From positions 248,001 to 312,000 of the IMG/VR virus record IMGVR_UViG_3300032116_000001: a DNA stretch of 64,000 nt. The stretch is one strand, 5' to 3'. The position numbers were made by a program, and so were the translations under genes. The notes beneath the pieces are model-generated. The model was not told the origin of the DNA, ran no database searches, and worked only from the letters and a program-made list of their open reading frames with translations. Below are positions 729-57,225 of this stretch, piece by piece (position 1 is the first letter of the stretch; every line of letters starts with the position of its first letter).

Positions 729-2969
729 ATGGTAGACATTTTGGGTTTAAAAATGACTGCAGATCAAGACAATTTAGTGGAAATCATCGGAGAAGTAACG
801 CGAGTTAATCGCTTTGACAGTGGATACGCCATTGTGACCGTTAAGAAAGGTAATACATCTGTCAAATTAGTGGGAGATATGCCAGGAATTTCCGAGGGTA
901 TGACAATCAAAGCCCTCGCTGAAAAAACTGTACACCAAAAATATGGAGAGCAGTTTAAAGTTCGGGATATTGAGGAAAATGGATTTGCTAATATAGATTC
1001 GCTCATTAAATATTTATCTAGCAACACATTTTCTGGAATAGGGGTTTCCACGGCCAGGTCTATTGTGCAAGTTTTTGGGATGGAAACATTCGATATTTTA
1101 GACAATGATCCAGAAAGACTCTATGATGTCCCAGGCCTATCAGATTCAAAAGTTGACTCTATTATTCAATGTTGGACAGAAAATCGAGAATTTAACAGAA
1201 TTATAGCCGAATTAGTTAAGTATGGCATGACTCCCATGATGGCCAAGAAAGTCTACAAATCGCTTGGCGAATCTGCTTTAGATATGATTCGAGAAAATAT
1301 CTACACATTAACACAAGTTTCGGGAATTGGATTTCTTAAAGCGGATGAAATTGCCCTTAAGTCGGGTGTTAAATTAGATAGTCCACAGCGCGTTGACGCC
1401 GCTGTTTTGTACGTACTCGATCAAGCGTTGTCCAGTGGACATTGTTATTTGCCTCTTCCTGATGTTTCTGAACAATCAGTGGGGCTTCTAAAAGGCAACG
1501 TGAACGCAACACATGTTATGGAGTCTGTCCGAAGGTTGGCTTCGTCATCTCAAATTGTGAACGAAAACCACAAAATATTTCTTTCAGGTATCCGCGAGGC
1601 TGAGAAAAATGTTGCTAGTATGATCACAGATATGTTGTGCTACAAGGGTGATGCCATATACAAAGACCTTGCAGCACTTAGAAAGGATTTAAAACAAATT
1701 GATGTCACAAAAGATATTGTTCTTGCTGAAAAGCAAGAGGAAGCCTTGTTCACGGCCCTTAATTCAAGGGTTGCGATTATAACTGGTGGCCCAGGTGTTG
1801 GTAAAACCACGGTCACGAAAGCCCTTTGTGCGCTTTTCGAAAGGCACAACATGGATTTTTTGCTTTGCGCACCTACGGGCCGCGCTGCAAAAAGGCTTTC
1901 CGAGGCCACAGGATCAGAGGCCTCAACTATACATCGATTGCTAAAAGGGGATTCAACTTCCCAAAAGTTTACTTATCATCAGGGAAATCCACTTTGGGCC
2001 GATGTTGTTGTCATTGATGAATCGTCAATGATGGACATTAGATTGTTTAGATCGATTTTATTTGCAATGGAAAGACACATGAGACTAATTATTGTGGGTG
2101 ATAAAGACCAATTACCATCCGTTGGACCAGGAAATGTATTAAGAGACCTTATTTCATCAGGCAAAGTCCCTTGTGTTAAGTTAGATCAAATATTCAGACA
2201 AAGCAAGGGGAATACTATTATTCCCGTAGCACACGACATTTTGCATGGCGTAGTGCCTGATTTGCCAACACCTATTGAATCTAAAGGAAGAAATTGCGTT
2301 TTAGTTGTCTCTGAAGATCAGGCAACACTGACCGATATGATCATTAAGTTGGTTACTCAATCATTGCCAAAGGCAGGTTTCAAAAATGAAGACATTCAAA
2401 TTCTAACCCCCATGCGTGGTCGGGGACTGGGGGTTGAAGATTTAAATCCACCTCTGCAAGCGGCACTTAATCCGCCATCTGATAAAAAGCCAGAAATCCA
2501 GGATAGAAATCGTATTTTTAGGGTTGGTGATCGCGTTATGCAAATTAAGAATAATTATAAAAAGGGCGATGCGGGGGTTTTCAACGGAGACATAGGTTAT
2601 ATTTCGTCTATTATAAATGACGAAAAAGATGGCACGACAATTTGGGTTAAATACCCCGATATGGAATCGCCAGTTGAGTATTCTCGCGAAGACTGGGATG
2701 AAATTATGCATTGTTTAGCGTGCACTGTTCATAAGTCTCAGGGTGCAGAATATCCTTGCGTAATTTTGGTTCAACATCCTTCCCAATATAATATGCTCCA
2801 ACGCAACTTGATTTACACTGGAGTGACTCGTGCCAAAAAGCTTTGTATTATTGCGGGCACTAAGAAAGCGCTAGAGATAGCAGTGGCAAATGACAGGGAA
2901 ATATCTCGCAATACAACTTTATCTGATCTGTTGAAAAATTTAGTTGACGATACTTCTAGGGCATCATAG
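729..2969 (+). CDS. recD2: RecD2-like SF1B helicase
   Basis: N-terminal HhH repeats (SGIGVSTA, GIGFLKAD), Walker A GGPGVGKT, APTGRAAKRL, IDESSM, VGDKDQLPSVGPG, TVHKSQGAEY, YTGVTRAK. True start may be ATG 753. Ends in TAG. Confidence 0.95.
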   Translation: MVDILGLKMTADQDNLVEIIGEVTRVNRFDSGYAIVTVKKGNTSVKLVGDMPGISEGMTIKALAEKTVHQKYGEQFKVRDIEENGFANIDSLIKYLSSNTFSGIGVSTARSIVQVFGMETFDILDNDPERLYDVPGLSDSKVDSIIQCWTENREFNRIIAELVKYGMTPMMAKKVYKSLGESALDMIRENIYTLTQVSGIGFLKADEIALKSGVKLDSPQRVDAAVLYVLDQALSSGHCYLPLPDVSEQSVGLLKGNVNATHVMESVRRLASSSQIVNENHKIFLSGIREAEKNVASMITDMLCYKGDAIYKDLAALRKDLKQIDVTKDIVLAEKQEEALFTALNSRVAIITGGPGVGKTTVTKALCALFERHNMDFLLCAPTGRAAKRLSEATGSEASTIHRLLKGDSTSQKFTYHQGNPLWADVVVIDESSMMDIRLFRSILFAMERHMRLIIVGDKDQLPSVGPGNVLRDLISSGKVPCVKLDQIFRQSKGNTIIPVAHDILHGVVPDLPTPIESKGRNCVLVVSEDQATLTDMIIKLVTQSLPKAGFKNEDIQILTPMRGRGLGVEDLNPPLQAALNPPSDKKPEIQDRNRIFRVGDRVMQIKNNYKKGDAGVFNGDIGYISSIINDEKDGTTIWVKYPDMESPVEYSREDWDEIMHCLACTVHKSQGAEYPCVILVQHPSQYNMLQRNLIYTGVTRAKKLCIIAGTKKALEIAVANDREISRNTTLSDLLKNLVDDTSRAS

Positions 2970-2973
2970 CAAA

Positions 2974-3004
2974 AGCCCTGCAAATGAAAAACATTTGCAG
3001 GGCT
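2974..3004 (+). terminator. Hairpin after recD2, probable terminator
   Basis: 13-bp stem AGCCCTGCAAATG / CATTTGCAGGGCT followed by a T-rich tract. Confidence 0.7.
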
Positions 3005-3087: not shown

Positions 3088-3930
3088 ATGTTAAGAAAAT
3101 TCGCCGAAACTGCCATGTGGCTTGACCAGCAGGGGCTTTTTGCTGAAGCTGATGTTGTAACTGACGTGCTTCGCAAATATGCTGCTAATGCCCTTTGGGA
3201 GGCAGATGACGAAAATGATGTTGAGGAAATTGACCCATATCATGCTCAGATGTATCACACAATTAAGAATTTAGACTTAAGCGACCCTGAACACCTAGAA
3301 ATTATTCGCGGCGCACATCCAGAACTTGCCGATGCGATAGAAAATTATACACCTGGCCGCAGAATACCAATGAAAGAGCCAATGCGGTATGGACCTCGGA
3401 CAGTAATGTTGCCCCCAGGATTTAAAAGCAATTTTGAAAAAAGACTCCCAGAGTTTTTTATGAGCCCAGATCAACTTCAACGCAACAGAGAGGCTTTTTA
3501 TGACAGACTCGATAAGGCCACACGCAACCGATCTCGTCGTGCAACTTTTGATTTAGATTATGCTTCTACAAGCAAACCTGGATATGAGCGGTCTTACATT
3601 TTTGATCCCGAATTAAATAGTCTAATGTCTTCTGACCCCGATTTTAGACCAAGCGAAAACAATGTTAGTCTTTATGACAAAAGAAAGCTTCGCGCACTTT
3701 TTGATCCAACATTTGATCTTGAGTCACTGGATGAAGACGAAAAATCTGGAAGAGAGCGCTATTTAGGCGTTGATCCCAAGACGGGTGAACCATACTCTCT
3801 TCCTAAGCAGATTGGTTGGGCTCACCGTCAAATTAAGCCCGAAAGTGTTTTAACATTCCGCGGTCACAAAGGCGAAGTCGATCCCGAAACTGGAAAGCGC
3901 AAGCCAAATTACTACTTTAAAGCCAGATAG
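3088..3930 (+). CDS. Hypothetical protein with N-terminal A-x2-LD-x2-G-x3-EAD motif; possible virion/internal protein
   Basis: AMWLDQQGLFAEADVVTDVLRKYA; GAGGAG SD; ends TAG-TAA. Confidence 0.75.
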   Translation: MLRKFAETAMWLDQQGLFAEADVVTDVLRKYAANALWEADDENDVEEIDPYHAQMYHTIKNLDLSDPEHLEIIRGAHPELADAIENYTPGRRIPMKEPMRYGPRTVMLPPGFKSNFEKRLPEFFMSPDQLQRNREAFYDRLDKATRNRSRRATFDLDYASTSKPGYERSYIFDPELNSLMSSDPDFRPSENNVSLYDKRKLRALFDPTFDLESLDEDEKSGRERYLGVDPKTGEPYSLPKQIGWAHRQIKPESVLTFRGHKGEVDPETGKRKPNYYFKAR

Positions 3931-3944
3931 TAAAAGGATACATT

Positions 3945-19862: not shown

Positions 19863-19866
19863 TTTT

Positions 19867-22800: not shown

Positions 22801-24669
22801 GATGTCTTAAAAGCGACGTCAGTGTCGGGAACTGACCCTGTCACAGTTGCATTGGGATGGGCTGCAGATACTGATACAGGAATTACAAGCCTTAATAGTC
22901 AGACAGGAAACACACAAACGTTTGCAAATGATACAAACGTTACAATTACATCAGGTTCTAACACTCATACACTTGGGTGGAGCGGCCAGCTTTCTGTTGG
23001 CCGCGGTGGAAGTGGTGCGGGAACGTTCACCTCAAATGGTGTCTTGCTCGGGAATGGAGCATCTCCTTTTAATGTGACAGCTGCTGGCACTGCCAACCAA
23101 GTCTTACGAATTCCTGGGGCTGGCGGAGCGCCAGTTTTTGGTGCAATTGATCTTGCACAAGCCGCCGCGGTCACGGGCACACTTGCGGTCGGAAACGGTG
23201 GGACTGGGACTGGAACTGCGTTTACGGCGGGGAGTGTTGTTTTTGCAGGTTCTGGTGGAACATATTCGCAAGACAATGCAAATCTTTTCTGGGATGACAC
23301 AAACGACCGCTTAGGAATAAGAACTAATACACCAGGTGCTACACTTCATATTAACCCGTCAACTGGCTCTCAGGCGTCATGGTTACAAGAAGGTGCTTTC
23401 TTTAGGGTTCAGGCTGGAACAAGAACAAACAACAGCACCGCAACATCTGGAACAGCTACATGGGCAGTGTTTAACTCATTTGCGCAACCAACCTTAGCGG
23501 CCACGAACACTGGCGTCACAACCACAAACGCAGCAACCGTATTTATAGCTAACTCTCCAGCGGCTGGGGCTAATATGACAATTACCAACAGGTATGCTCT
23601 ATGGGTAGACGCTGGTTGGTCAAGATTTAACGGCTCTGTGGGATTGGGCTTGGTCCCAGATGACAACAACATGTTGTTCAGTTTTATTACCACTTCCTCA
23701 AACTTAACTCGACGTGCGATACAGGGCTTAAATTCGGTTACGGGATCAATTACCTCAACATTTCCCGTTGGTATATCAGGAAGAATAGAGATTAATGCTG
23801 CCGCAAACACAATTTCATACGCAGCAGGGCTGTTTGGATCAGCAAGAACACTTTCGGGCCAAAGCGGGACTATTACCGCTCTTTACGGTATGGATTTCGA
23901 TGTATGGCATCAGGGCACCGCAAATATTGGCACCATGGCAGCGTCCAGAGCTTTTGCTACACTAACAAATACATCTAATGGAACCATTACTGATTGGATT
24001 GGCTATTCTGCACAGCTTAATACCTCTGTTGGCGGAAGTGCTTCTGCCACAAATGCATTAGGTTACGATACGATCTTTTCATTAAGCGGATCGGGAACGA
24101 TTGCAAATCTAACAGGCTACCGAATACAAAACCCGTCGGGAAGCCAAACGATAACAAATCTTTATGGCATTCGGATCGCTGACCTAACGCGGGGAACAAA
24201 CAACTTCGGTATCTACTTTGATGGTACATCAGGGCTGGCAAGGCAAGGCATCTGGTGGAATGCTGACACAAATCTTTATCGCTCAGCAGCAAACACACTG
24301 AGAACGGATGATGAACTAGTCGTTGGGCAAAGAGCTACATCAGGCGTTGTCGTGTTGACAGACGGGGCGAATATCTCACTAGATGCCAGTTTGGGCAACC
24401 ACTTCAGGGTGACTTTAGGGGGTAACAGAACACTACTGGCTCCGACAAATCCAGTCGATGGACAAAAGATTACGATTGAAGTCATTCAAGACGGTGGCGG
24501 AAATAGGACATTAACTCTAACCACGGGGAGTAGCGGAAGTTTCATTTTTGGGACAGATATAACAGGAATAACACTTACCACGACTGGTGGCCTGCGCGAT
24601 TTAATCGGATGTGTTTATTCATCATCGCTTAGTCGATGGATGGTTGTGAGTTTTGTCAAGGGATTCTAA
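19867..24669 (+). CDS. Long tail fibre / receptor-binding protein (about 1600 aa)
   Basis: G/S/T-rich; SQDNANLFWDD..RLG twice, ERMRID, large internal duplication, C-terminal DASLGNHFRVTLGGNRTL..PTN..GQ..IQDGGGNRTLT tip domain; ATG at 19867. Confidence 0.9.
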   Translation: MPWNETDIAFKKLNNKRVTTNLGKGINEERGAKTINVSADEIWTDSVPGVPPGSTTSVIEVYDYADRLTLIEDLSVPNQQAWFATTITNTVTANNGTTLSESSRLMDWVSDKYDAPGTAPGLGYEIKVYDKDDILIPKGDASQWYFDYQTGILIFRNASTDSGSVSSRAPFKIVGYRYIGNKGAGTVSSIGGSNGIITDLISNAPITSSGNLQLDVAYSPSWSSRHTFSYNPTSGVSTNHILSITGAPFGQSSGAAIEIGATSAFDGSTAGFFNGSSSGTYIAINAASSYTGDFLNFGLAAGAGYSERLKISGQGVLSLLNPGGASGPQIFFGNASAPSSPSNGDLWYTGSALNFRSSGTIYNLIGSTIGDPLSGGTVGSVIFVGSGNTLSQDNANLFWDDSNNRLGLGNATPQMPLDVRTGASSIIRALNTTSSGLNEGSVISLHQGDVGLIVNGNRLGGIMMGGADGANYSSQHNAAAIQAFAGQTWSFGSSEGSYLTFETTPLGSASRVERMRIDAGPIIWFGNGAASASPISTTISATSGLGTNIGGANLTIRSGSGTGTGQSGDIVFQTATPGGSGSGANAHSDRFVISSHGDITIYGNTGNILWHADTSKLIIDGDGYSDHVSIKQGGVTSIQLGHSSLSGLLGGRIYGSGEEAGGLEISSVSSIQLLSGVDHGIDIYPPGVGAGETGQLRFRELDANGSNFISFKSPDAIANNVTYVLPSAHPSTNQVLTASSISGSGPYEVVLSWGTPSGGGITSLNGQTGGTQTFANDTNVTISSSSNTHTLGWTGQLAVSRGGTGAGTFTSNGVLLGSGTSAITATAAGTSNQVLRVPGAGGAPAFGAIDISSTAAVTGSLAVTNGGTGTGTAFTENNVVFAGSSGVYSQSNAFAFTSSTGQLALSTTGAAAGVLIGGDVQLYRSGANILGIPDIVEIRSANELRFNNSADTKFTSFVPGSQTVTINYTLPASAPSLNDVLKATSVSGTDPVTVALGWAADTDTGITSLNSQTGNTQTFANDTNVTITSGSNTHTLGWSGQLSVGRGGSGAGTFTSNGVLLGNGASPFNVTAAGTANQVLRIPGAGGAPVFGAIDLAQAAAVTGTLAVGNGGTGTGTAFTAGSVVFAGSGGTYSQDNANLFWDDTNDRLGIRTNTPGATLHINPSTGSQASWLQEGAFFRVQAGTRTNNSTATSGTATWAVFNSFAQPTLAATNTGVTTTNAATVFIANSPAAGANMTITNRYALWVDAGWSRFNGSVGLGLVPDDNNMLFSFITTSSNLTRRAIQGLNSVTGSITSTFPVGISGRIEINAAANTISYAAGLFGSARTLSGQSGTITALYGMDFDVWHQGTANIGTMAASRAFATLTNTSNGTITDWIGYSAQLNTSVGGSASATNALGYDTIFSLSGSGTIANLTGYRIQNPSGSQTITNLYGIRIADLTRGTNNFGIYFDGTSGLARQGIWWNADTNLYRSAANTLRTDDELVVGQRATSGVVVLTDGANISLDASLGNHFRVTLGGNRTLLAPTNPVDGQKITIEVIQDGGGNRTLTLTTGSSGSFIFGTDITGITLTTTGGLRDLIGCVYSSSLSRWMVVSFVKGF
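22144..23271 (+). repeat. Internal duplication in the tail fibre (two copies of about 130 aa, 735 nt apart)
   Basis: GITSLNxQTGxTQTFANDTNVTI...GTGTGTAFT..VVFAGS.G.YSQ at about 22144-22536 and 22879-23271. Confidence 0.9.
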
Positions 24670-34561: not shown

Positions 34562-35788
34562 ATGCCAGAAATATTTCGTATTAGTGGTATGCATATTTCA
34601 AATATAATTTACAAAGGCGACCACGATGAGGCTACAATAAAGCAGATTCAGAATTGCGCTACAGATGAGTATGCGCAGCATGCTGTGCTGTGTGCAGATG
34701 GACACAAAGGTTGGAATATGCCCATTGGCGGCGTAGTGGCTTATGAAAATCACATCAGCCCTGCGGGAGTTGGGTTTGACATTGCGTGTGGTAATAAGGC
34801 CGTGCAGCTCAATGTAACATACGATCAAATTAAGGACGATTTGGCCAAAATCGCTGATGAAATTTTTGCATCTTTATCATTCGGAGTGGGAAGGGTGAAT
34901 AATGAGCGTGTCGAGCATGATGTATTTAATGATGCTGCGTGGCGCAACGTTAACTTTCTTCGTAAAACTCAATCGTTGATGCCTCTTGCTAGAGAACAAC
35001 TTGGTACTATCGGCTCTGGTAATCATTATGTAGATGTGTTCAAAGATGAAAAGGATTGTGTATGGGTGGGTGTTCACTTCGGTAGCCGAGGCCTTGGGCA
35101 CAAGATTGCCACTGAGTTCATTACTCAAGCTGGTGCAAATCCCAATGGTAACATGGATGATCCTCCTTGTCTTTTGGATGTAAACACTTCACTGGGGGAA
35201 GACTATATTCAAGCTATGAATTTAGCAGGACGGTATGCTTATGCAGGAAGAGACTGGGTGTGTCAGAAGGTGGCTTCTATCCTTGGAGCACAGATCGTGG
35301 AAGAGATTCATAATCACCATAATTTTGCATGGAAGGAGAATCATTTTGGCTCGGATTATTGGGTAGTCAGAAAGGGAGCTACTCCCGCGGCTCCTGGGCA
35401 GAAGGGATTTGTCGGCGGATCAATGGGCGAAAACTCTGTGATCCTTGAGGGTGTTGACACTGAAGAATCTGCGAAAATGCTTTATTCTACAGTACATGGC
35501 GCAGGCCGTGTACTGTCAAGAACTCAAGCCGCAGGCAAAACAAGATGGGTGAACGGAGAAAAAATCAGAGTTTCTGAAGGCCTTGTGAACATGGATAATG
35601 TTTTAAAGAATCTTTCCGAAAGTGGTGTAATCCTTCGTGGCGGTGGTGCTGACGAAGCGCCAGAGGTTTACAAGAGATTACCCGAAGTGCTTGCGCATCA
35701 TGGAAATACGATCAAGGTTGTTCACCAATTGAGCCCACTAATTGTGTGTATGGCGGGATCGGAAATCAGAGACCCGTATAAAGATTAA
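34562..35788 (+). CDS. rtcB: RNA 3'-phosphate/5'-OH ligase RtcB
   Basis: ADGHKG..MPIGG, VGFDIACG, LGTIGSGNHY, HFGSRGLG, HNHHN, RKGATPA, HGAGR, DEAPEVYK. Confidence 0.95.
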   Translation: MPEIFRISGMHISNIIYKGDHDEATIKQIQNCATDEYAQHAVLCADGHKGWNMPIGGVVAYENHISPAGVGFDIACGNKAVQLNVTYDQIKDDLAKIADEIFASLSFGVGRVNNERVEHDVFNDAAWRNVNFLRKTQSLMPLAREQLGTIGSGNHYVDVFKDEKDCVWVGVHFGSRGLGHKIATEFITQAGANPNGNMDDPPCLLDVNTSLGEDYIQAMNLAGRYAYAGRDWVCQKVASILGAQIVEEIHNHHNFAWKENHFGSDYWVVRKGATPAAPGQKGFVGGSMGENSVILEGVDTEESAKMLYSTVHGAGRVLSRTQAAGKTRWVNGEKIRVSEGLVNMDNVLKNLSESGVILRGGGADEAPEVYKRLPEVLAHHGNTIKVVHQLSPLIVCMAGSEIRDPYKD

Positions 35789-40574: not shown

Positions 40575-40966
40575 GTAAGTATCAGAGTAAATACATCGCT
40601 TTTGTGGTCGGAGCAGGGGAGGGTTGTGATTACACGATGGGTTGTAATCGCAGCCTCTTTGAGATCGTGGCAGAAACAGATGACCAGGCACACAAGGGGC
40701 TGTTTGAACTTCTATTTGGCGAGTGGTGTGAAGATAGAAAATGCTGGGTAAGCTCTGGGTTACATAATCCCGACAATCGTGTTGGCGAGGTGTATCTGTT
40801 CAAGGTTGACTCGTGCTCAGGAAACATCATAAGCGAGATGCTTCAGACAAAAGATATTTTTGACAATTCCGAAAAAGAGCAGATCGAGACAATTCGCCGT
40901 CATAAGTCCGAGGAAGCGGAACGCCTTGAATATGAGCGCCTCAAAGCCAAGTTCGGAGAACAATGA
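40571..40966 (+). CDS. Hypothetical protein
   Basis: GEGCDYTMGC; C-terminal ERLEYERLKAKF. Confidence 0.75.
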   Translation: MSKYQSKYIAFVVGAGEGCDYTMGCNRSLFEIVAETDDQAHKGLFELLFGEWCEDRKCWVSSGLHNPDNRVGEVYLFKVDSCSGNIISEMLQTKDIFDNSEKEQIETIRRHKSEEAERLEYERLKAKFGEQ

Positions 40967-41577
40967 AATCCTATCCATCTATTCCGCAAAGTACAGGCCA
41001 GTCATTTTGTGAGTTTCAGGCGTATGTTTTTGACAAACTTGACGGATCGAACTTGCGCTTTGAATGGGCGCGAAAATCGGGCTGGGGCAAGTTTGGGACA
41101 CGTAATCGGTTATTTGACGAGAGCGATCCTGTATTTGGCTCGGCAATACCCATCTTCTTTGATACTCTTGCCGAGCCCATCGAGAGAGTTGCGAGCATGG
41201 AAAAATGGGAACGTGTCACAGTATATGCCGAGTTCTGGGGCGAGAAAAGTTTTGCTGGCTTACATGAACCTGGTGATCCTAAAGTCCTAACACTCTTTGA
41301 TGTCGCACCTCACAAGAAGGGTTTACTCGGCCCACAAGAGTTTTTGAAGAAGTTCGACCACCTTCCAATTCCTAAGCTTCTAGGCCAGATGAAATGGACA
41401 CGCGACTTAGTACAGCGTGTGCGAGAGGGCGAACTTGAAGGAGTGACTTTTGAGGGAGTGGTTGGCAAGGCTGGCGAGGGTCACAAGCTCATTATGGCCA
41501 AAGCAAAAACTCAAGCCTGGATCGATGCAGTTCGGTCCCGATGTGGCGCAACCGCCGATCAGATAATTGCCAGTTAA
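40963..41577 (+). CDS. RNA ligase (Rnl2-like nucleotidyltransferase domain)
   Basis: DKLDGSN, AEFWG, LFDV, EGVV, AKAK motifs. Confidence 0.8.
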   Translation: MKSYPSIPQSTGQSFCEFQAYVFDKLDGSNLRFEWARKSGWGKFGTRNRLFDESDPVFGSAIPIFFDTLAEPIERVASMEKWERVTVYAEFWGEKSFAGLHEPGDPKVLTLFDVAPHKKGLLGPQEFLKKFDHLPIPKLLGQMKWTRDLVQRVREGELEGVTFEGVVGKAGEGHKLIMAKAKTQAWIDAVRSRCGATADQIIAS

Positions 41578-44302: not shown

Positions 44303-45178
44303 ATGAAGAAAGCCTTTACGCTCATCGAACTTCTTGTTGTTATCGCAATTATTGCTATTTTAGCTGCGATTCTTTTCCCCGTCTTTTCTCAGGCCAAGCT
44401 TGCCGCCAAGAAAACTGTTGGTTTAACCCAAGTTAAACAGATTGGAACATCAATGCAGCTGTATGTCGGCGATTATGATGACATGCTGTTTCCGTACCGA
44501 CTTAATGGTACACAAAACCCCGATTATGCCCGCGCCATTGCTGCTCGGGGGCAGGCGTATGCCGATAGCGTTGTAGGAACTAGTGCAAGAAATGTTATTT
44601 TCTTTAACCAGCTTCTGCAACCATATATGAAAAATAATGATATTTTCAAGGCACCTACCAAGCCAAATGCCTGGGCTGGCGTTGATACTTTCGGTTCTGA
44701 CACTGAACCTGCATTCCGATCTTACGGCGGACAAAACAGCTATGGTGTTAACAATTATGTGTTTACATCTCAGGCGGGCACGTCATCAATCGGCGGGGGG
44801 CTTAATATGGGCGAAATAGCAGAACCAAGCAATACTTTGATTATGGTTGATGCAAGCTATTATAATGTTCTTCCCCGATTCGTTGGAAGACTTAATGGAT
44901 ACACTGGCACATTTAATGTGTGCAGCAGCAGTTACCCGTTGTATTGGAAGAATCTCGGCAACTCCTATCTCTTTAGATGGAATGGTGGACCAAACACGCC
45001 ATCTGACGCTGAAGCTCTGCGATTGATTAATAACCGATATAATGGACCATTGAATATGGTTCAGGGCGACACTAGTTCAAGAGCCGTTGCAGCTAATGCA
45101 ATTCTGAACAACCTGAGAGATCGGGGCGCAGAATCATTTTGGGACCCATACAAACTCGGCAACACTCCATGTCCGTAA
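44303..45178 (+). CDS. Prepilin-type N-terminal cleavage/methylation domain protein (DUF1559-like)
   Basis: [35 protein letters not shown]...Y..DYDD, PYMKN, SYG.N. Confidence 0.92.
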
Positions 45179-45255: not shown

Positions 45256-46017
45256 ATGAGACAGGCTTTTACACTTATTGAATTACTTGTTGTGATCGCA
45301 ATTATCGCGGTTTTGGCTGCAATCCTTTTCCCAGTTTTTTCACAAGCAAAGGAAGCTGCCAAGAAAACTCAGTCGATTTCCAACATGCGCCAACTTGGTA
45401 TTTCCTGGCAGCTTTACAATACTGACTACGATGATACCTTAATGAGAGTTTCTGTGCCTGATGAGCATGGTGTGGTTTATTGGTGGGGATGTTGGGAAGA
45501 AGACGAACAAGAACTTAGAGTTGAGGAAGGCCTTTTATATCCTTATACTCGAAACAATGGTATTTACAAGGATTCATCTTTTAATGCTCAAGTTACGGGA
45601 AGTATGAATTTCTCTGGGTATGGATATAATTATGCTTATTTGAGTCCGTCAACTTATTCTCCTCCGAACTGGGAAGAAAATCCCATTCCCGTAAATGCTT
45701 CATCGATTGAGTTTCCATCTGAGACAGTCGCTTTTGCATCAAATGCGAGACTAAATACATGGGCTTATGACAATCCTGTTTTAGAGGGCACGGGATACTT
45801 AGAGCCACCTTCTTTCGATTTCCCAACATTTCAGGGCCGACACAATAAGCATGGCGTAGTACTTTGGTCTGACGGGCATGCCAAGGCGCAAAAGCCTATT
45901 TTGAGGACTGGGGACTTCGGCTGGGGATATAACGGGGCTCAGTTTGCCCCATATAATCTTGGGGAAATAGATAAAGATGGTAATCTTTCAACTGATGAAC
46001 TTTTTGATTTAGAGTGA
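45256..46017 (+). CDS. Prepilin-type N-terminal cleavage/methylation protein with C-terminal H-X9-DG motif
   Basis: [16 protein letters not shown]...QAKEAAKKT; GYGYN; [16 protein letters not shown]. Confidence 0.92.
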
Positions 46018-46064: not shown

Positions 46065-46422
46065 GGGGGCATAAGGGATCGATTGACGTTGCTATCTTAT
46101 GTTTGCAAGGCGCGGATGTATCCTTGGCCGCGATAACAAAGGATGCAAAAAGTAAATGCGGAAAACAACTTCGCTTTCGCTGCTTAATTAAGCTGGCGCA
46201 TGAACCTGAGACGAGTCTGTAGTTAATGGGGATTGTAAAATAAATCAGACTTAGCTTTGAAACTTCGGCTTGTAGTTGAAAAAGCGATATTAATCAAGCT
46301 GCTGTCAAGAAAGTGCTGGCCTCTAGCCAAAGCTTGACTTAAGATTAATATGAGGAGAACCTTGTGGCGAGCATAGGCTCTGTACGGACAACAAGCGGGT
46401 TCAAATCCCGCTGCCTCCACCA
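46065..46422 (+). ncRNA. ssrA: tmRNA with tag (A)AENNFAFAA
   Basis: 5' GGGGGCA pairs with 3' TGCCTCC-ACCA including the G3-U Ala determinant; T-arm GCGGG-TTCAAAT-CCCGC; resume codon GCG at 46158, TAA at 46185-46187. Confidence 0.95.
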
Positions 46423-46427
46423 ATTTT

Positions 46428-46461
46428 GCAGTATGATTTTTTCATACTGCTTTTATTTTTT
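46428..46461 (+). terminator. Intrinsic terminator after the tmRNA
   Basis: GCAGTATGA-TTTTT-TCATACTGC followed by TTTTATTTTTT. Confidence 0.85.
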
Positions 46462-46617: not shown

Positions 46618-46691
46618 ATGATTTTTTTTGGGTTTTTAGTCCCAAATTGCCTACTTTTTATTTAAAAATACGTATTATAATTATATTGCTT

Positions 46692-46762
46692 GCTCCATTA
46701 GCTCAATGGTAGAGCTGGGGTCTCTAAAACCTTGGTCGCGGGTTCGATTCCCGTGTGGAGCA
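46692..46762 (+). tRNA. tRNA with CUA anticodon (amber suppressor) no. 1; CCA not encoded
   Basis: Acceptor GCTCCAT/GTGGAGC, D-arm GCTC..GAGC, anticodon arm GGGGT-CTCTAAA-ACCTT (CTA at 46724-46726), T-arm GCGGG-TTCGATT-CCCGT, A73. Confidence 0.85.
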
Positions 46763-46783
46763 GACAATATATTAAAAATACGC

Positions 46784-46858
46784 GCTCTAGTAACTCAGTG
46801 GTAGAGTGGCCCTCTCTAAAAGGGCATGTCGCGGGTTCGAGTCCCGCCTAGAGCGCCA
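46784..46858 (+). tRNA. tRNA with CUA anticodon (amber suppressor) no. 2
   Basis: Acceptor GCTCTAG/CTAGAGC, D-arm ACTC..GAGT, anticodon arm GCCCT-CTCTAAA-AGGGC (CTA at 46816-46818), T-arm GCGGG-TTCGAGT-CCCGC, G73-CCA. Confidence 0.93.
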
Positions 46859-47314: not shown

Positions 47315-47390
47315 GGGTCAGTAGCTCAGTTGGTAGAGCAGCGGTCTTTTAAACCGCGGGTCGCGGGTTCGAGCCCCGCCTGGCCCACCA
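47315..47390 (+). tRNA. tRNA-Lys(UUU)
   Basis: GGGTCAG/CTGGCCC-ACCA; anticodon arm GCGGT-CTTTTAA-ACCGC. Confidence 0.96.
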
Positions 47391-47401
47391 GAATTTTTCA
47401 T

Positions 47402-47477
47402 GGAGGGATAGCTCAGTCGGTAGAGCAGCTGACTCTTAATCAGCATGTCGTGGGTTCGATCCCCACTCCCTTCACCA
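47402..47477 (+). tRNA. tRNA-Lys(CUU)
   Basis: GGAGGGA/TCCCTTC-ACCA; anticodon arm GCTGA-CTCTTAA-TCAGC. Confidence 0.96.
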
Positions 47478-47632: not shown

Positions 47633-47752
47633 AAGGAGGTCTCACCTATGTTGTAGGTCATTCGTCCGCCTTAATCATATTTGTAATTCCATTCACTAAC
47701 TTCGTTCATGGCTTTGCATAGCCCACGATTACAAACAGAAATACAAATATGA
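47633..47752 (+). promoter_or_regulatory. Amber-containing leader (ATG TTG TAG GTC ATT CGT CCG CCT TAA, 47648-47674) and an 11-bp helix over the next start codon
   Basis: AAGGAGG SD at 47633-47639; TCATATTTGTA (47675-47685) is exactly complementary to TACAAATATGA (47742-47752), which contains ATG 47749. Confidence 0.7.
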
Positions 47753-48776: not shown

Positions 48777-49502
48777 ATGACTACCGAATACAAACCGCCA
48801 TATGTTGCTCGCCTTGGTGAAGGTTTTTTAAAGCCTTGCAAGTTTAGTGACGGAAAAGTTCACAAGATTAAATATCACTATGTTGATGTCTATGAGGTTA
48901 ATGAGGACTCAGAAACTAAAATAGGAACATACGAGGTTTCCGATTTTAAGTCCCCGCGTGTTGTGTTTCATCCGTTTAGACATGACGGTGAATGGTACGC
49001 ACTAGTAAGTGAAAGCAAAAAAATATTTGTCTATTCATTGCCAGAAATGAAATTATTAGCTGAACTTGAACCACAGGGTTGCATTAAGTTTTTAGAATTT
49101 TATATACCCAGATTTCATCATGTAGTATATAAAGGAGTTGCTTTTACTCTTGTGGACAAAGAAATTGAAGAAGATTATAAGGATAATGAAGCATGGTGCC
49201 ATGCAGATTTTGCTTTTGTAATGGGGTATGACCCGTTCTGTAATTCGCCTAATTACGTAAATATTGTTGATCTTTCAAATATTAAGATCGGAGAAATTAA
49301 ATTTAAGCAAGAATATTGGCATGAATGTCCGCAGTGGCTTGATTTAAATCAAATTGTGCAAATATCCTATTGGGATAAAAGCTTCCCTGCATTTGCAATC
49401 GCCACAGTAGAGTATGCTTCAACGTCAACGGGCTTAAAATGCGGAAACAATGGATGGACTGACGAAACTCTTGGTGCCATAGATAGTGGTGAAAAATCAT
49501 GA
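48777..49502 (+). CDS. Hypothetical beta-rich protein
   Basis: AAGGA SD; ATG 1 nt after the previous stop. Confidence 0.75.
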   Translation: MTTEYKPPYVARLGEGFLKPCKFSDGKVHKIKYHYVDVYEVNEDSETKIGTYEVSDFKSPRVVFHPFRHDGEWYALVSESKKIFVYSLPEMKLLAELEPQGCIKFLEFYIPRFHHVVYKGVAFTLVDKEIEEDYKDNEAWCHADFAFVMGYDPFCNSPNYVNIVDLSNIKIGEIKFKQEYWHECPQWLDLNQIVQISYWDKSFPAFAIATVEYASTSTGLKCGNNGWTDETLGAIDSGEKS

Positions 49503-49825
49503 GCTAGACTACCGCGCCTTATATATATATTTTCGTTAGAAAAGACATTGGCGTAGCGGACCAGATGGTTCAGGCCTGTCATGCTGCGCAAGAATCGGGA
49601 GCTAAATTTGGCTGCCCCGATTCTTGCCACCTTGTTCTTTGCTCGGTTGAAAATACATTTGAATTGGAAAAAATAAGCTATGTTTGCCAAGAGAATGACA
49701 TAAAATTTGTTACTTTTTACGAGCCTGATGACCAGATGGGAGACACTGCAATTTGCACGGAACCAATCTGGGGAGAAAAAAGAAAGGCTTTTAGAAAATT
49801 TAACACATGGAAACCCGTGGTATAA
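49499..49825 (+). CDS. Pth2-like peptidyl-tRNA hydrolase with in-frame TAG at codon 3 (49505-49507)
   Basis: ATG AGC TAG ACT..., then YIFVRKDI...QMVQACHAAQE...HLVLCSVEN..EL...FYEPD....TAICTEP; ATGA overlap with the upstream stop; the ORF-track start at 49565 would remove the conserved VRxD strand. Confidence 0.8.
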
Positions 49826-49853
49826 ATATTGATTTCTTTTCGTAGAATAATTA

Positions 49854-53054: not shown

Positions 53055-53347
53055 CAATTCTCTATAAGTCTTACGGACAGCTGGTTTTGTGGGCCAACTG
53101 TGAAGAAATTGGCGGTGATTACTGGCAACATGCTCATATTATTGATGATAGTGAATGGGAACGCTTACTTAATGAAGCGCAAGGGAATAAGGACGTGATT
53201 AGGCCACAAGATATTGATTCTACTGGGCACACAGTGCCGCTTTTAGAAGTTACGGAAGACCTTCTTAGTATAATGTGCGAAAGCGAAGGTGTTGAGTTAA
53301 TTCATATTTGGCCTGATGACCAGGAGGAACAGGATGACATGTTATGA
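53051..53347 (+). CDS. Hypothetical acidic protein
   Basis: ATGA-coupled 98-aa ORF. Confidence 0.7.
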   Translation: MTILYKSYGQLVLWANCEEIGGDYWQHAHIIDDSEWERLLNEAQGNKDVIRPQDIDSTGHTVPLLEVTEDLLSIMCESEGVELIHIWPDDQEEQDDML

Positions 53348-53552
53348 GGCTTTTGACGCCCTGCTGGCAGGCAAGCGAGTGCGTCGAGCAGCGTGGACTG
53401 AAGCGACTTCATGGAAGATGTCGTCCAAGCAGGATGATTACCCAACTCTTATACAAATGTGGGTGGGTAATACCGTAATCACTACGTATGTCACCGAGGA
53501 AGACCTCACTGCTACCGACTGGGAAGTTGTACCCAACCAAGAAAATAAATAA
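53334..53552 (+). CDS. DUF2829 / Tad2-like (Thoeris anti-defence 2-like) protein
   Basis: MTCYEAFDALLAGKRVRRAAW...EDLTATDWEVV; AGGAGG SD. Confidence 0.75.
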   Translation: MTCYEAFDALLAGKRVRRAAWTEATSWKMSSKQDDYPTLIQMWVGNTVITTYVTEEDLTATDWEVVPNQENK

Positions 53553-55723: not shown

Positions 55724-56275
55724 ATGAATCATCCAAACATACTTGTAAATTTTTTTGGCGGCCCAGCAATTGGAAAAAGCAATTGCGCAAGATCGCTTTG
55801 TTCATTATTGAGTGAATTCGGTATATCAAACGAATATGTTCCCGAATTTGCAAAAAAATTAACTTGGAAATCTGACTTAAACACCAGATCAAACCAAGTG
55901 TTTGTTACAGCAACACAATTTGACGACATACTAACTGTTTATGATAAGGTGTCCGTAACGGTCACTGATGGCCCCTTAATTCTGGGCATGGTTTATCCAG
56001 GCCCATGCTGCACTCCCGTTTGGAAAGAACATGTTATTGAAATGCATAATTATTTCAACAACATCAACATATTTATTCAAAGAAATAATGAATGGTATCA
56101 GCCAATTGGCAGAACCCAAACACTTGAAGAATGCATAAGTGCCGATCAAAGAACTTTAGACTTCTTGAATCAATATCAAATTGATTATGTCACCATCCCA
56201 GCTGACAGACACATGTCTAGTCGTGTCTTTGATGTTTTAATGGAGAAAATAAAAAATGAGAAAACACACACATAA
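55724..56275 (+). CDS. P-loop NTPase, NadR/AAA_28-like
   Basis: NFFGGPAIGKS, EFAK.L.W, TDGPL, GRTQTLEE. Confidence 0.8.
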   Translation: MNHPNILVNFFGGPAIGKSNCARSLCSLLSEFGISNEYVPEFAKKLTWKSDLNTRSNQVFVTATQFDDILTVYDKVSVTVTDGPLILGMVYPGPCCTPVWKEHVIEMHNYFNNINIFIQRNNEWYQPIGRTQTLEECISADQRTLDFLNQYQIDYVTIPADRHMSSRVFDVLMEKIKNEKTHT

Positions 56276-56750
56276 ATACATTGAAGTGATCGTGAACGGC
56301 AAAGTTATTAGTCGATTTACTCGCCCAGAAGCTTACAAAAGTATAAATGAAGCTCGCGACAATTATTCAAGTATTTACAAGAAATGGAAAAGAGATGACT
56401 CTGATTATCCATGTCTTAATTGCGATGGGGCAGGCACTTATCATAAGTTTGAAGATAGAGACATTATAGAGGGCTACAAACTGGCTCCGCTTTATACATG
56501 TAAATCGTGCAGTGGCTCTGGCCGCGGCCCCAAAGAGATGTTTAAGGCATACTATGACGCTGAAAAACAAAAGATTAAAGCGCAACAACAAAAATTTGAC
56601 AAAGACTTAGATTCTTTTATGGAAGCGATACAAGTTCTTAGCCCCGAACAAATTTTAACACTAAATAAAATGCTAGGAAATGTGTGTCCAATTTATGAAA
56701 AAAATGCCCCAATTAAGAAAATTAAGGTGAGAAAAAATGGAATGGCGTAG
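56256..56750 (+). CDS. Protein with DnaJ-type zinc-finger repeats
   Basis: CLNCDGAG and CKSCSGSG; ends in TAG. Confidence 0.75.
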   Translation: MRKHTHKYIEVIVNGKVISRFTRPEAYKSINEARDNYSSIYKKWKRDDSDYPCLNCDGAGTYHKFEDRDIIEGYKLAPLYTCKSCSGSGRGPKEMFKAYYDAEKQKIKAQQQKFDKDLDSFMEAIQVLSPEQILTLNKMLGNVCPIYEKNAPIKKIKVRKNGMA

Positions 56751-57225
56751 TGGTGATATGCTGCAGGTAGCAAGGGAAGAAGAATGCGAAATTATTGCCT
56801 TCACTGCAAACTCCGTGCTTAAAAGCATCAACGGAAGTCAAGCTTTAGTTATGGGCGGCGGCGCAGCTAAGCGTGTTCGAGATGCTTTTCCTGGTATTGA
56901 TGTTCAGCTTGCTGAAAAAATCATAGAGTCAAGAAGTATTGACAACAATAATTCAGCAGACTATTATGTTGTTGCATCAAAAACTAATGGTTTGTGGGTT
57001 GCCGCAGTTCAAGTAAAAAGACATTGGAAAGATGATGGAGACTGGAAACTTACTGAAACAAGCCTCAAAACCTTGGCCAGACATTTGTCAAAAAATCCGA
57101 ACCGTAAATGTGTTCTTAATTGCCCGTTAATTGGGCTTGGTGGCTTTTCTGACCGCATTGATGATGTGAAACAGATGGTAGAGGACACACTTAAAGACGC
57201 CAATGTTTTCGTTTGTATAATTTGA
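56737..57225 (+). CDS. Macro-domain-like (ADP-ribose-binding) protein
   Basis: GDM, FTANS...LVMGGGAAK, VKRHWKD, PLIGLGG. Confidence 0.8.
   Translation: MEWRSGDMLQVAREEECEIIAFTANSVLKSINGSQALVMGGGAAKRVRDAFPGIDVQLAEKIIESRSIDNNNSADYYVVASKTNGLWVAAVQVKRHWKDDGDWKLTETSLKTLARHLSKNPNRKCVLNCPLIGLGGFSDRIDDVKQMVEDTLKDANVFVCII

What the first reader, a model, noticed from the sequence alone, without database searches (positions are those of the whole stretch)
46692..46858. Two different tandem amber-suppressor (CUA) tRNAs
Both cloverleaves have the 7-nt loop CTCTAAA (anticodon CUA) but differ in acceptor stem and discriminator (A73 without encoded CCA; G73 with CCA). Two independent copies argue against a sequencing error. 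The loop is one base from Trp (CTCCAAA) and one from Lys-CUU (CTCTTAA). In E. coli, such amber tRNAs are often charged with Gln or Lys, so the two may insert different amino acids (inference). Suppressor tRNAs are reported in huge phages, but here candidate target codons lie next to them.
Basis: partly seen in the sequence, partly recalled or inferred. Interest (0 to 1): 0.8.

Follow-up and report, generated by a model that had tools for sequence, protein, structure and literature searches.

The report
Two amber-suppressor tRNAs in huge phage
A roughly 380 kb freshwater phage carries two different, intact tRNA genes that read the stop codon UAG; this kind is already known from large phages, and the unusual point is that the 143 kb examined is otherwise in the standard code, with one nearby gene that needs UAG read-through.

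Summary
ARAGORN and Rfam call two canonical cloverleaf tRNAs with anticodon CUA at 46692-46762 (A73, no encoded CCA) and 46784-46858 (G73 plus CCA). The region is identical in at least seven independent assemblies.

The window is part of a 378,848-bp IMG/VR huge-phage contig. The pair sits between a phage tmRNA, which is abundant in four freshwater metatranscriptomes, and tRNA-Lys(UUU) and tRNA-Lys(CUU). Those Lys tRNAs are the closest relatives of the pair among the phage's own tRNAs.

I reconstructed 143 kb around the pair. It uses the standard code, and no gene is split by TAG, including giant tail- or fibre-like genes.
- TAG ends only 8 of 119 genes.
- Seven of those eight have a second in-frame stop within five codons, against 35 of 111 other genes (p about 0.003).
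- One conserved gene 2.6 kb downstream, a PTH2-fold peptidyl-tRNA-hydrolase-like protein, has TAG as codon 3, ahead of a conserved core strand.

Best reading: these are real, probably active phage suppressors in a genome adapted to leaky UAG, with little or no recoding in the part seen. The inserted amino acids, tRNA expression and the other 62% of the genome remain untested. This is a new member of a known kind, of moderate interest.

The parts
46065..46422 (+). Phage tmRNA with tag AENNFAFAA, immediately upstream of the suppressor pair.
   Evidence: ARAGORN. Rfam RF00023, 91.3 bits. Perfect 340-nt contigs at depth 36-57 in four freshwater metatranscriptomes, with flanks near zero.
46428..46450 (+). 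Terminator-like hairpin plus T-run after the tmRNA. The tRNA pair therefore probably has its own start of transcription.
   Evidence: Consensus scan. This is inference only.
46662..46672 (+). The 11-mer TTAAAAATACG upstream of tRNA 1. The same 11-mer recurs upstream of tRNA 2 at 46772-46782, which looks like a trace of a local duplication.
   Evidence: Exact matches at 46662 and 46772. There is only one other exact copy in the window.
46692..46762 (+). tRNA(CUA) 1: 71 nt, 4-nt variable loop, A73, no encoded CCA.
46784..46858 (+). tRNA(CUA) 2: 75 nt including CCA, A10-U25 pair, 5-nt variable loop, G73.
47315..47390 (+). tRNA-Lys(UUU), the closest relative of both CUA tRNAs among the phage's 18 tRNAs found.
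   Evidence: Pairwise identity is 72-73%.
47402..47477 (+). tRNA-Lys(CUU), the last member of the four-tRNA cluster.
49499..49828 (+). PTH2-fold (peptidyl-tRNA-hydrolase-like) gene. Its ATG overlaps the TGA of the upstream gene (ATGA), codon 3 is TAG, and the conserved first strand lies between that TAG and the only later canonical start (ATG 49565).
   Evidence: Translation. 960 homologues, nearly all beginning 1-5 residues before the PY-x-Y-x-F-V-R strand. PF01981 matched by 10 of 25 family members, and a PDB peptidyl-tRNA hydrolase at E 1.6e-4. Model pLDDT 95.6, with strand 5-11 and Met20 inside helix 1. The top 14 PDB fold matches are all PTH2 family.
49505..49507 (+). In-frame TAG, the candidate codon read by the suppressor tRNAs.
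   Evidence: Identical in every assembly holding the region.
2967..2987 (+). TAG stop of the RecD2-like gene, followed by TGA five codons later (backup stop).
3928..3933 (+). TAG TAA tandem stop of gene 3088-3930.
56748..56756 (+). TAG TGG TGA: TAG stop of gene 56256-56750 with a backup stop one codon later.

Best explanation
The two genes are genuine phage-encoded amber-suppressor tRNAs. They belong to the translation module of a huge freshwater phage of roughly 380-420 kb, together with a tmRNA, at least 18 tRNAs, RtcB and an RNA-ligase-like gene. They most likely arose by duplication and divergence within the local Lys-type tRNA cluster.

During infection they are charged by host synthetases. 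The amino acid is unknown; Lys and/or Gln are the likeliest from the shared U35 and from A73 and G73. They then decode UAG in competition with host RF1.

The phage genome is written in the standard code but is adapted to leaky UAG. TAG is a rare stop, and almost every TAG stop is backed up by a second stop. At least one gene needs read-through of a TAG at codon 3 to make its full-length product: a PTH2-like peptidyl-tRNA hydrolase next to the tRNAs.

The phage is therefore in a state with suppressors but minimal recoding, rather than fully recoded, at least in the 38% of the genome examined.

Shown: the tRNA anatomy, the compensatory changes, the stop statistics, and the in-frame TAG ahead of a conserved core strand.
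Inferred: expression, charging, actual read-through, and the descent from tRNA-Lys.
For: - Both tRNAs are called by ARAGORN and Rfam with high scores.
- All stems are kept through compensatory changes.
- The region is identical in seven assemblies.
- The source is the huge-phage contig IMGVR_UViG_3300032116_000001.
- The closest own tRNA is Lys(UUU), at 72-73%, and an 11-mer is repeated before each CUA tRNA.
- In the 143,482-bp composite, 119 genes of at least 100 aa end in TAA 90, TGA 21 and TAG 8. Seven of the eight TAG stops have another in-frame stop within five codons, against 35 of 111 for the rest (Fisher p 0.003). Six of eight have one within two codons, against 16 of 111 (p 0.0005).
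- The PTH2-like gene has TAG at codon 3, with the conserved strand before Met20, stable across samples.
- The neighbouring tmRNA is highly expressed in situ, so this locus is active in nature.
- A relative carries the PTH2-like gene directly next to an RF-like (PCRF/RF-1) gene, which links the module to termination.
- In a relative's 21-kb locus, the two TAG stops have no close backup, at 11 and 20 codons.
Against: - There is no direct evidence that the tRNAs are transcribed, matured (tRNA 1 needs CCA addition) or charged. The metatranscriptome contigs do not resolve them.
- Only one convincing in-frame TAG was found in 143 kb. It sits in a variable N-terminus, so a rare non-canonical start (ATA or ATT inside the strand) or a truncated product from Met20 cannot be excluded.
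- The backup-stop statistic rests on eight genes. It weakens to p 0.04 if only TAA and TGA count as backups.
- One TAG-terminated gene has no backup stop.
- No promoter-like site was found in front of the pair.
- No syntenic relative with DNA available shows the same tRNAs. Relative L019 has the tmRNA, but ARAGORN finds no tRNA in the roughly 600 nt that remain after it on that contig.
Confidence: 0.6

Rival explanations
1. This is a classic alternatively coded (code-15-like) phage. The suppressors exist to translate many late genes (capsid, portal, terminase, lysis) that carry in-frame TAG and lie in the roughly 235 kb I could not read. The window is simply the standard-code early part.
For: Recoded phages keep replication genes in the standard code and concentrate TAG in structural and lysis genes, and they carry suppressor tRNAs and RF2 (Borges et al., bioRxiv 10.1101/2021.08.26.457843; PMC13037316). 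The window is rich in replication and nucleotide-metabolism genes. A relative has an RF-like gene at the syntenic place. TAG is depleted as a stop.
Against: Coding density under code 11 is 93% over 143 kb. That stretch includes likely virion genes with no in-frame TAG: a 682-aa 'minor tail protein' (phrog_13352, E 8e-39), ORFs of 2282+, 1654 (PA14/GLEYA) and 2889 aa, and a fibre-like 1604-aa protein (a lead only). TAG is still used as a genuine stop in eight genes.
Confidence: 0.22
2. The suppressors act mainly on the host. Read-through of host TAG stops disturbs host proteins and drives ribosomes to mRNA ends, and the phage's tmRNA and PTH2-like hydrolase deal with the consequences. The phage's own genes are shielded by avoiding TAG and by tandem stops.
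For: The suppressors, an expressed tmRNA and a peptidyl-tRNA-hydrolase-like gene are co-located. The phage's own TAG stops are backed up, and there are few phage targets.
Against: This is purely inferential. The host is unknown and its TAG usage was not examined. It overlaps with the best explanation rather than excluding it.
Confidence: 0.1
3. The tRNAs are not working suppressors. They could be decaying duplicates of tRNA-Lys whose anticodons drifted, decoys or substitutes aimed at host anticodon nucleases, or tRNAs whose anticodon is modified to read a sense codon.
For: They sit beside two tRNA-Lys genes and near RtcB and an RNA-ligase-like gene, a setting typical of tRNA cleavage and repair conflicts. 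tRNA 1 lacks CCA, whereas 15 of the 18 phage tRNAs encode it. Expression is unproven.
Against: Both keep every stem through compensatory changes and keep the conserved tertiary bases, with Rfam scores close to those of the Lys tRNAs. Both share the same nine-base extended anticodon loop, TCTCTAAAA. The backup-stop pattern and the TAG in the PTH2-like gene are hard to explain without suppression.
Confidence: 0.08

Closest known systems
Suppressor tRNA(CUA) genes of TAG-recoded phages: Lak, crAss-like, Agate and other jumbo phages (Borges et al. 2021/2022; PMC13037316)
   Same: A phage-encoded tRNA with anticodon CUA in a large genome that also carries other translation genes. TAG is depleted as a stop. 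An RF-like gene is present in a relative.
   Different: In the 38% of the genome examined there is essentially no recoding: one in-frame TAG in 143 kb, and tail-like genes are intact under code 11. There are two different tandem copies. RF2 was not found in the window.
Standard-code relatives of recoded phages that have already acquired a suppressor tRNA, the proposed evolutionary intermediate in Borges et al.
   Same: A standard-code genome, a rare stop codon, the suppressor present, and the first in-frame stops tolerated.
   Different: The published example is a TGA suppressor in gut Agate phages. This is a TAG pair in a freshwater huge phage. As far as the papers I read go, the tandem-stop signature and the TAG in a translation-rescue gene are not described there.
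tRNA(CUA) of Bxz1-like (cluster C) mycobacteriophages
   Same: The best full-length database match of tRNA 1 (75-77% identity). It is annotated tRNA-OTHER, TERM or Pyl, in phages that otherwise use the standard code.
   Different: The similarity is low and is probably generic tRNA body similarity. The hosts are unrelated, and there is a single copy there.
Laboratory E. coli amber suppressors such as Su7 (tRNA-Trp with CUA, charged with Gln) and CUA versions of other tRNAs that are mischarged with Lys or Gln (recalled from established literature, not tested here)
   Same: The same anticodon loop, CUCUAAA, with U35 as the shared determinant for GlnRS and LysRS.
   Different: These are natural phage genes. 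Their acceptor stems (G1-C72, C2-G71, U3-A70) match neither E. coli Gln nor Trp determinants, and the host synthetases are unknown.
prfB (RF2) autoregulation through an early in-frame stop codon (an analogy only)
   Same: A translation-termination or rescue gene carries an early in-frame stop, so its own decoding efficiency gates expression.
   Different: prfB uses a +1 frameshift at UGA at codon 26. Here it would be suppression of UAG at codon 3. No regulatory role has been shown.

Membership tests
Canonical elongator tRNA (Rfam RF00005) | Covariance-model score above the gathering threshold. | tested here: met
   60.5 and 69 bits against a threshold of 29.
Canonical elongator tRNA (Rfam RF00005) | Cloverleaf with 7/4/5/5-bp stems and a 7-nt anticodon loop, with U8, A14, G18G19, U33, the GTTCGA T-loop and C61. 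| tested here: met
   Sequence reading, MFE folds, and 100% of stem cells paired with compensatory changes.
Canonical elongator tRNA (Rfam RF00005) | Transcribed, processed, CCA-ended and aminoacylated. | not testable with these tools
   The metatranscriptome contigs show the tmRNA but no tRNA-sized RNAs.
Amber suppressor tRNA | Anticodon C34 U35 A36 flanked by U33 and a purine at position 37. | tested here: met
   Loop CTCTAAA in both.
Amber suppressor tRNA | UAG is actually decoded as an amino acid in vivo. | tested here: inconclusive
   Indirect evidence only: an in-frame TAG ahead of a conserved strand of the PTH2-like gene, and enrichment of backup stops.
tRNA-Pyl (ARAGORN's label) | Atypical body: 6-bp anticodon stem, 3-nt variable loop, short D-loop without G18G19, and an unusual T-loop. 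| tested here: not met
   Both have 5-bp anticodon stems, 4-5-nt variable loops, GG in the D-loop and a GTTCGA T-loop.
tRNA-Pyl (ARAGORN's label) | pylS and pylBCD genes present. | tested here: not met
   No such Pfam families among the roughly 60 window proteins scanned. The rest of the genome was not seen.
Alternatively coded (code 15) phage | Many genes interrupted by in-frame TAG, with coding density that rises markedly when TAG is read as sense. | tested here: not met
   Coverage is 93.1% under code 11 and 94.3% with TAG as sense in the window. No gene is split by TAG in 143 kb. 62% of the genome was not examined.
Alternatively coded (code 15) phage | A suppressor tRNA for the recoded stop. 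| tested here: met
   Two tRNA(CUA) genes.
Alternatively coded (code 15) phage | Phage RF2, which is frequent but not universal. | tested here: inconclusive
   None in the window by Pfam. A relative (GroEL 68% identical) has a PCRF/RF-1 gene in 37-aa plus 196-aa pieces at the syntenic site, but no DNA was available for it.
PTH2 peptidyl-tRNA hydrolase (for the gene with the in-frame TAG) | PTH2 alpha/beta fold. | tested here: met
   AlphaFold model pLDDT 95.6. The top 14 Foldseek PDB hits are all PTH2 family, with TM 0.7-0.79.
PTH2 peptidyl-tRNA hydrolase (for the gene with the in-frame TAG) | Pfam PF01981 score above the gathering threshold. | tested here: not met
   13.2 bits against 23 for this protein. 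10 of 25 family members match, best E 8.7e-6. The family profile hits PDB 24bt_A at E 1.6e-4. It is a distant branch.
PTH2 peptidyl-tRNA hydrolase (for the gene with the in-frame TAG) | Catalytic residues and hydrolase activity. | not tested
   Invariant Q22, H25 and E72 in the family alignment were not mapped onto known active sites.

The most novel reading that the evidence does not exclude
The TAG at codon 3 of the PTH2-like gene is a built-in sensor. The peptidyl-tRNA hydrolase is made only once the phage's suppressor tRNAs out-compete RF1, which ties a ribosome-rescue module (tmRNA, PTH2-like protein, RF-like gene in relatives) to a phage-imposed change in how UAG is read. The two suppressors, with A73 and G73, are charged with different amino acids. 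This would be a regulatory use of suppression in a phage that has not otherwise recoded its genome.
Probability: 0.15. Interest if true: 0.7.

Novelty: new member of a known kind. Interest (0 to 1): 0.4.

Why it matters
Phage suppressor tRNAs are usually discussed as tools for reading heavily recoded late genes. This phage looks like the earlier or alternative state. It has suppressors, a genome that protects itself from them (few TAG stops, nearly all backed up), and a single conserved translation-rescue gene that depends on read-through.

If confirmed, it gives a concrete natural system for testing two things: how stop-codon reassignment begins in phages, and whether suppression is used as a switch. 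It is also a caution for annotation. Under code 11 the PTH2-like gene is called as an 86-aa truncated product.

Tried and rejected
1. Bacterial chromosome. GroEL, a tmRNA and pilin-like genes suggested one at first. I rejected this because exact matches lie only in a 378,848-bp IMG/VR phage contig, the gene content is that of a jumbo phage, and many proteins have no Pfam family.
2. tRNA-Pyl. Rejected on structure (see the membership test).
3. Recoding in the window or its flanks. Read-through scans of the window and then of 91, 110 and 143 kb found no split genes.
4. A 314-aa gene ends in TAG and is in frame with the next 340-aa gene (L025:12401-14428), which looked like programmed read-through. 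The downstream gene has its own SD and ATG, its homologues are all stand-alone, and in a relative the first gene ends in TAA out of frame. It is kept only as a possible by-product.
5. A 49-aa ORF, TAG, then a 70-aa gene (L002:17475-17843). Unconvincing.
6. The mini-ORF AAGGAGG-N8-ATG TTG TAG at 47633-47656. AAGGAGG is not enriched in the window, so it may be chance.
7. The shared 11-mer before each tRNA as a promoter. It is not a genome-wide motif, and the promoter scan found nothing in front of the pair.
8. Relatives carrying the same tRNAs.
   - Protein-based scans of IMG/VR and the single metagenome scan returned only the same contig.
   - A degenerate tRNA pattern found unrelated CUA tRNAs in three other viral contigs and two MAGs.
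   - One GroEL relative had no DNA on file, and the other two gave only contigs of about 6 kb.
9. Isotype by similarity. The INPHARED hits are mixed (Lys, Gly, Asn, Thr, Met, Trp, and 'OTHER'), and the E. coli search was uninformative.
10. Expression of the tRNAs. The metatranscriptome contigs cover only the tmRNA.
11. Walking to the capsid, terminase or lysis genes.

Full report
**Observation.** The sequence at 46692-46858 holds two tRNA genes 21 nt apart.
- ARAGORN calls both with anticodon cta.
- Rfam's tRNA model scores them at 60.5 and 69 bits (E 1.3e-10 and 5.7e-13). The two tRNA-Lys genes 450 nt downstream score 72-73 bits.
- Both fold into the cloverleaf as the minimum-energy structure.
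The loop is CTCTAAA in both. tRNA 1 has A73 and no encoded CCA. tRNA 2 has G73 followed by CCA.
- I add that both share nine identical bases across positions 31-39 (TCTCTAAAA). tRNA 1 has a 4-nt variable loop, and tRNA 2 has an A10-U25 pair.
- The label 'tRNA-Pyl' is only ARAGORN's name for the anticodon. The bodies are canonical, not Pyl-like.
- The 1,071 bases spanning the region are identical in contigs from seven different samples, apart from one mismatch in one of them. Error is excluded.

**Where it comes from.** Exact matches to both tRNAs occur in one IMG/VR contig only, IMGVR_UViG_3300032116_000001, of 378,848 bp. The window is its positions 248001-312000. The same GroEL occurs on contigs of up to 420,993 bp.

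The gene content is that of a huge phage:
- DNA and nucleotide metabolism: RecD2-like helicase, a ClpX-like ATPase, adenylate kinase, ThyX, PRPP synthetase, RuvB, ATP-dependent DNA ligase, NAD synthetase and an Ogg-like glycosylase.
- RNA repair and chaperones: RtcB, an RNA-ligase-like protein and GroEL.
- Other: an SLT lysozyme, two pilin-like proteins, a sigma-70-like factor, glycosyltransferases, a Tad2-like protein, and many proteins with no family.

Directly upstream of the pair lies a tmRNA (tag AENNFAFAA) with a terminator-like hairpin. Four freshwater metatranscriptomes contain perfect 340-nt contigs of this tmRNA at depth 36-57, while the flanking genes are near zero. The locus is therefore active in nature. 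tRNA-sized RNAs cannot be seen in such data.

**Origin of the pair.** I walked outward from the window and assembled 143,482 bp of the genome. It holds 18 tRNAs.
- Both CUA tRNAs are most similar to the adjacent tRNA-Lys(UUU), at 72-73%, and to each other, at 71%.
- They do not resemble the phage's own tRNA-Trp, which is an odd 87-nt gene.
- The same 11-mer precedes each CUA tRNA.
- Across the four clustered tRNAs, all 84 stem positions pair, and 12 of 21 pairs show changes on both sides. After diverging, both CUA genes have therefore been kept as folded tRNAs.

I infer local duplication of a Lys-type tRNA followed by anticodon change. This is an inference from similarity, not a demonstrated history.

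**Does the phage recode TAG?** In the window, open frames of at least 100 codons cover 93.1% of the sequence under the standard code. Reading TAG as sense adds almost nothing, giving 94.3%. No real gene is split by TAG in the window or in the 143-kb composite.

That stretch includes probable virion genes, all uninterrupted:
- a 682-aa 'minor tail protein' (phrog_13352, E 8e-39);
- ORFs of 2282+, 1654 (PA14/GLEYA) and 2889 aa;
- a 1604-aa fibre-like protein, which is an atlas lead only.

The phage therefore does not match, in the 38% I could read, the published picture of code-15 phages whose structural genes are full of TAG.

**Signs that UAG is nevertheless leaky.** Of 119 genes of at least 100 aa, 90 end in TAA, 21 in TGA and only 8 in TAG.
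- Seven of the eight TAG stops are followed by another in-frame stop within five codons, and six within two. Examples are TAG TAA, TAG TGG TGA, TAG CAG TGA, TAG ACT CAG TGA and TAG TAG.
- The corresponding figures for the other genes are 35 of 111 and 16 of 111. Fisher p is 0.003 and 0.0005.
- Counting only TAA and TGA as backups gives 5 of 8 against 29 of 111 (p 0.04).
- The sample is small, but the direction is what selection against read-through products would produce.
- In a 21-kb locus of a related phage, the two TAG stops have no such backup.

**A target codon next to the tRNAs.** The gene called as an 86-aa protein at 49565-49825 is really longer.
- An ATG at 49499 overlaps the TGA of the upstream gene (ATGA). 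It is followed by AGC, then TAG at 49505-49507, then 19 sense codons before the ATG at 49565.
- The 105 residues after the TAG have 960 homologues. Almost all begin with a Met only 1-5 residues before the motif P-Y-x-Y-x-F-V-R-x-D-I, which here lies between the TAG and Met20.
- The family is a distant branch of PTH2 peptidyl-tRNA hydrolases. 10 of 25 members match PF01981, and the profile matches a solved peptidyl-tRNA hydrolase.
- The AlphaFold model is confident (pLDDT 95.6), with a first strand at residues 5-11 and Met20 inside helix 1. Its top 14 PDB fold matches are all PTH2 proteins, with TM 0.7-0.79.
- There is no ATG, GTG or TTG between the TAG and Met20. A full-length protein therefore requires initiation at 49499 and read-through of the TAG. 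The alternatives are a rare ATA or ATT start, or a truncated product lacking a core strand.
- The TAG is identical in all assemblies that hold it.
- The nearest homologue (64% identical) is in a syntenic relative. It starts normally with M-P-Y and is immediately followed by a gene with PCRF and RF-1 domains, called in two overlapping pieces like a frameshifted prfB. No DNA was available for that contig.

**Other candidates I do not rely on.**
- One TAG-terminated gene lacks a backup stop. This 314-aa protein is followed after 19 sense codons by an in-frame 340-aa weak paralogue, beside the tail gene. Suppression would make a fusion. However, the second gene has its own ribosome-binding site, its homologues are all stand-alone, and the relative has TAA and a different frame there.
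- A mini-ORF with a strong Shine-Dalgarno sequence (ATG TTG TAG, 47648-47656) lies just after the Lys tRNAs and may be chance.

**Amino-acid identity.** I could not settle this.
- Database matches are a mixture of isotypes. The best full-length match of tRNA 1 is the CUA tRNA of Bxz1-like mycobacteriophages, at 75-77%.
- From established identity rules (recalled, not tested), U35 is a main determinant for both LysRS and GlnRS. A73 fits Lys. G73 fits Gln, Trp and several others.
- Neither acceptor stem carries the E. coli Gln or Trp pairs.

**Mechanism proposed.** The pair is transcribed from the tRNA and tmRNA region. It is matured (tRNA 1 by the host CCA-adding enzyme), charged by host synthetases, and competes with RF1 at UAG. 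The phage's ordinary genes are shielded by rarely using TAG and by tandem stops. The PTH2-like gene, and possibly others in the unread 62% of the genome, is completed only when suppression works.

I give this reading 0.6. I give 0.22 to the classic alternative, in which many late genes elsewhere are recoded. Smaller weights go to a mainly host-directed role and to non-functional or decoy tRNAs.

**Comparison and novelty.** Suppressor tRNAs, release factors and tmRNAs in huge phages are documented (PMC7162821; the Borges et al. preprint; PMC13037316). So is the idea that standard-code phages acquire a suppressor before recoding. This is a new member of that kind.

The features that stand out are:
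- two diverged tandem copies;
- a genome that looks adapted to suppression without being recoded, as far as seen;
- an early in-frame TAG in a translation-rescue gene beside the tRNAs.

Interest is moderate at 0.4. It would be higher if the TAG proves to be a regulatory switch.

Noticed in passing
window 46065-46422: The phage tmRNA (tag AENNFAFAA) appears as perfect 340-nt contigs at depth 36-57 in four independent freshwater metatranscriptomes, while neighbouring genes are near zero. A relative's tmRNA has the tag ANNNFAFAA (L019:5705-6056).
   Followed up: partly
L002:11801-11887 (about 1 kb beyond the right end of the window): The phage tRNA-Trp(CCA) is 87 nt long, with a 12-nt insertion between the anticodon arm and the T arm. 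The neighbouring 'tRNA-Ser(CGA)', and a 'tRNA-Arg(UCU)' about 22.7 kb beyond the window end, also look atypical and lack CCA.
   Followed up: no
window 47633-47656: A strong Shine-Dalgarno sequence (AAGGAGG), 8 nt, then ATG TTG TAG. This is a two-codon mini-ORF ending in TAG just after the Lys tRNAs, reminiscent of lambda bar minigenes. AAGGAGG is not enriched in the window, so it may be chance.
   Followed up: partly
window 34562-35788 and 40963-41577, with tRNA-Lys at 47315-47477: RtcB and an RNA-ligase-like gene occur together with tRNA-Lys(UUU) and tRNA-Lys(CUU). This is the kind of set expected for repairing or replacing tRNAs cut by host anticodon nucleases.
   Followed up: no
window 44303-45178 and 45256-46017: Two paralogous phage genes carry a type IV pilin-like N-terminal methylation motif ([14 protein letters not shown]...). 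The nearest named GroEL relative is from a Fimbriimonadaceae MAG, which hints at the host lineage.
   Followed up: partly
L025:12401-14428 (about 19-21 kb left of the window start, minus strand): A 314-aa gene ends in TAG with no backup stop and is in frame, after 19 sense codons, with a weakly paralogous 340-aa gene next to a minor tail protein gene. Suppression would fuse them. The arrangement is not conserved in a relative (L029).
   Followed up: yes
Relative contig of 30,899 bp (sample ERZ1426830; gene table only): A syntenic relative has the PTH2-like gene directly followed by a PCRF/RF-1 domain gene called as overlapping 37-aa and 196-aa pieces, the pattern expected of an RF2 gene with its programmed frameshift.
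   Followed up: partly
window 53316-53552: A 78-aa protein with a Tad2-like (PF11195) hit on record, a family described as anti-Thoeris.
   Followed up: no
L002:16072-17250 and L023:2755-3876: Two TnpB / Cas12f-like (OrfB_IS605) genes lie inside the phage genome. They are not similar at the DNA level.
   Followed up: no
L025:18414-21497: The UvsW-like helicase is 1027 aa with an intein-splicing hit. The orthologue in the relative L029 is 617 aa, so the intein appears to be absent there.
   Followed up: no
L028:1-18670 and window 19855-24669: There is a run of giant ORFs (2282+, 1654 with PA14/GLEYA, and 2889 aa) and a 1604-aa fibre-like protein. The phage also encodes GroEL, DnaK and DnaJ.
   Followed up: no
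L007:2641-2796: An unrelated 176.5-kb IMG/VR phage contig also carries two adjacent, different tRNA(CUA) genes. Single CUA tRNAs with the same T-arm occur in a 395-kb and a 48.6-kb viral contig and in two bacterial MAGs (L008, L009, L031, L032).
   Followed up: partly
L002:17475-17843: A 49-aa ORF ending in TAG is followed two codons later by an in-frame 70-aa gene downstream of TnpB. Probably coincidence.
   Followed up: partly
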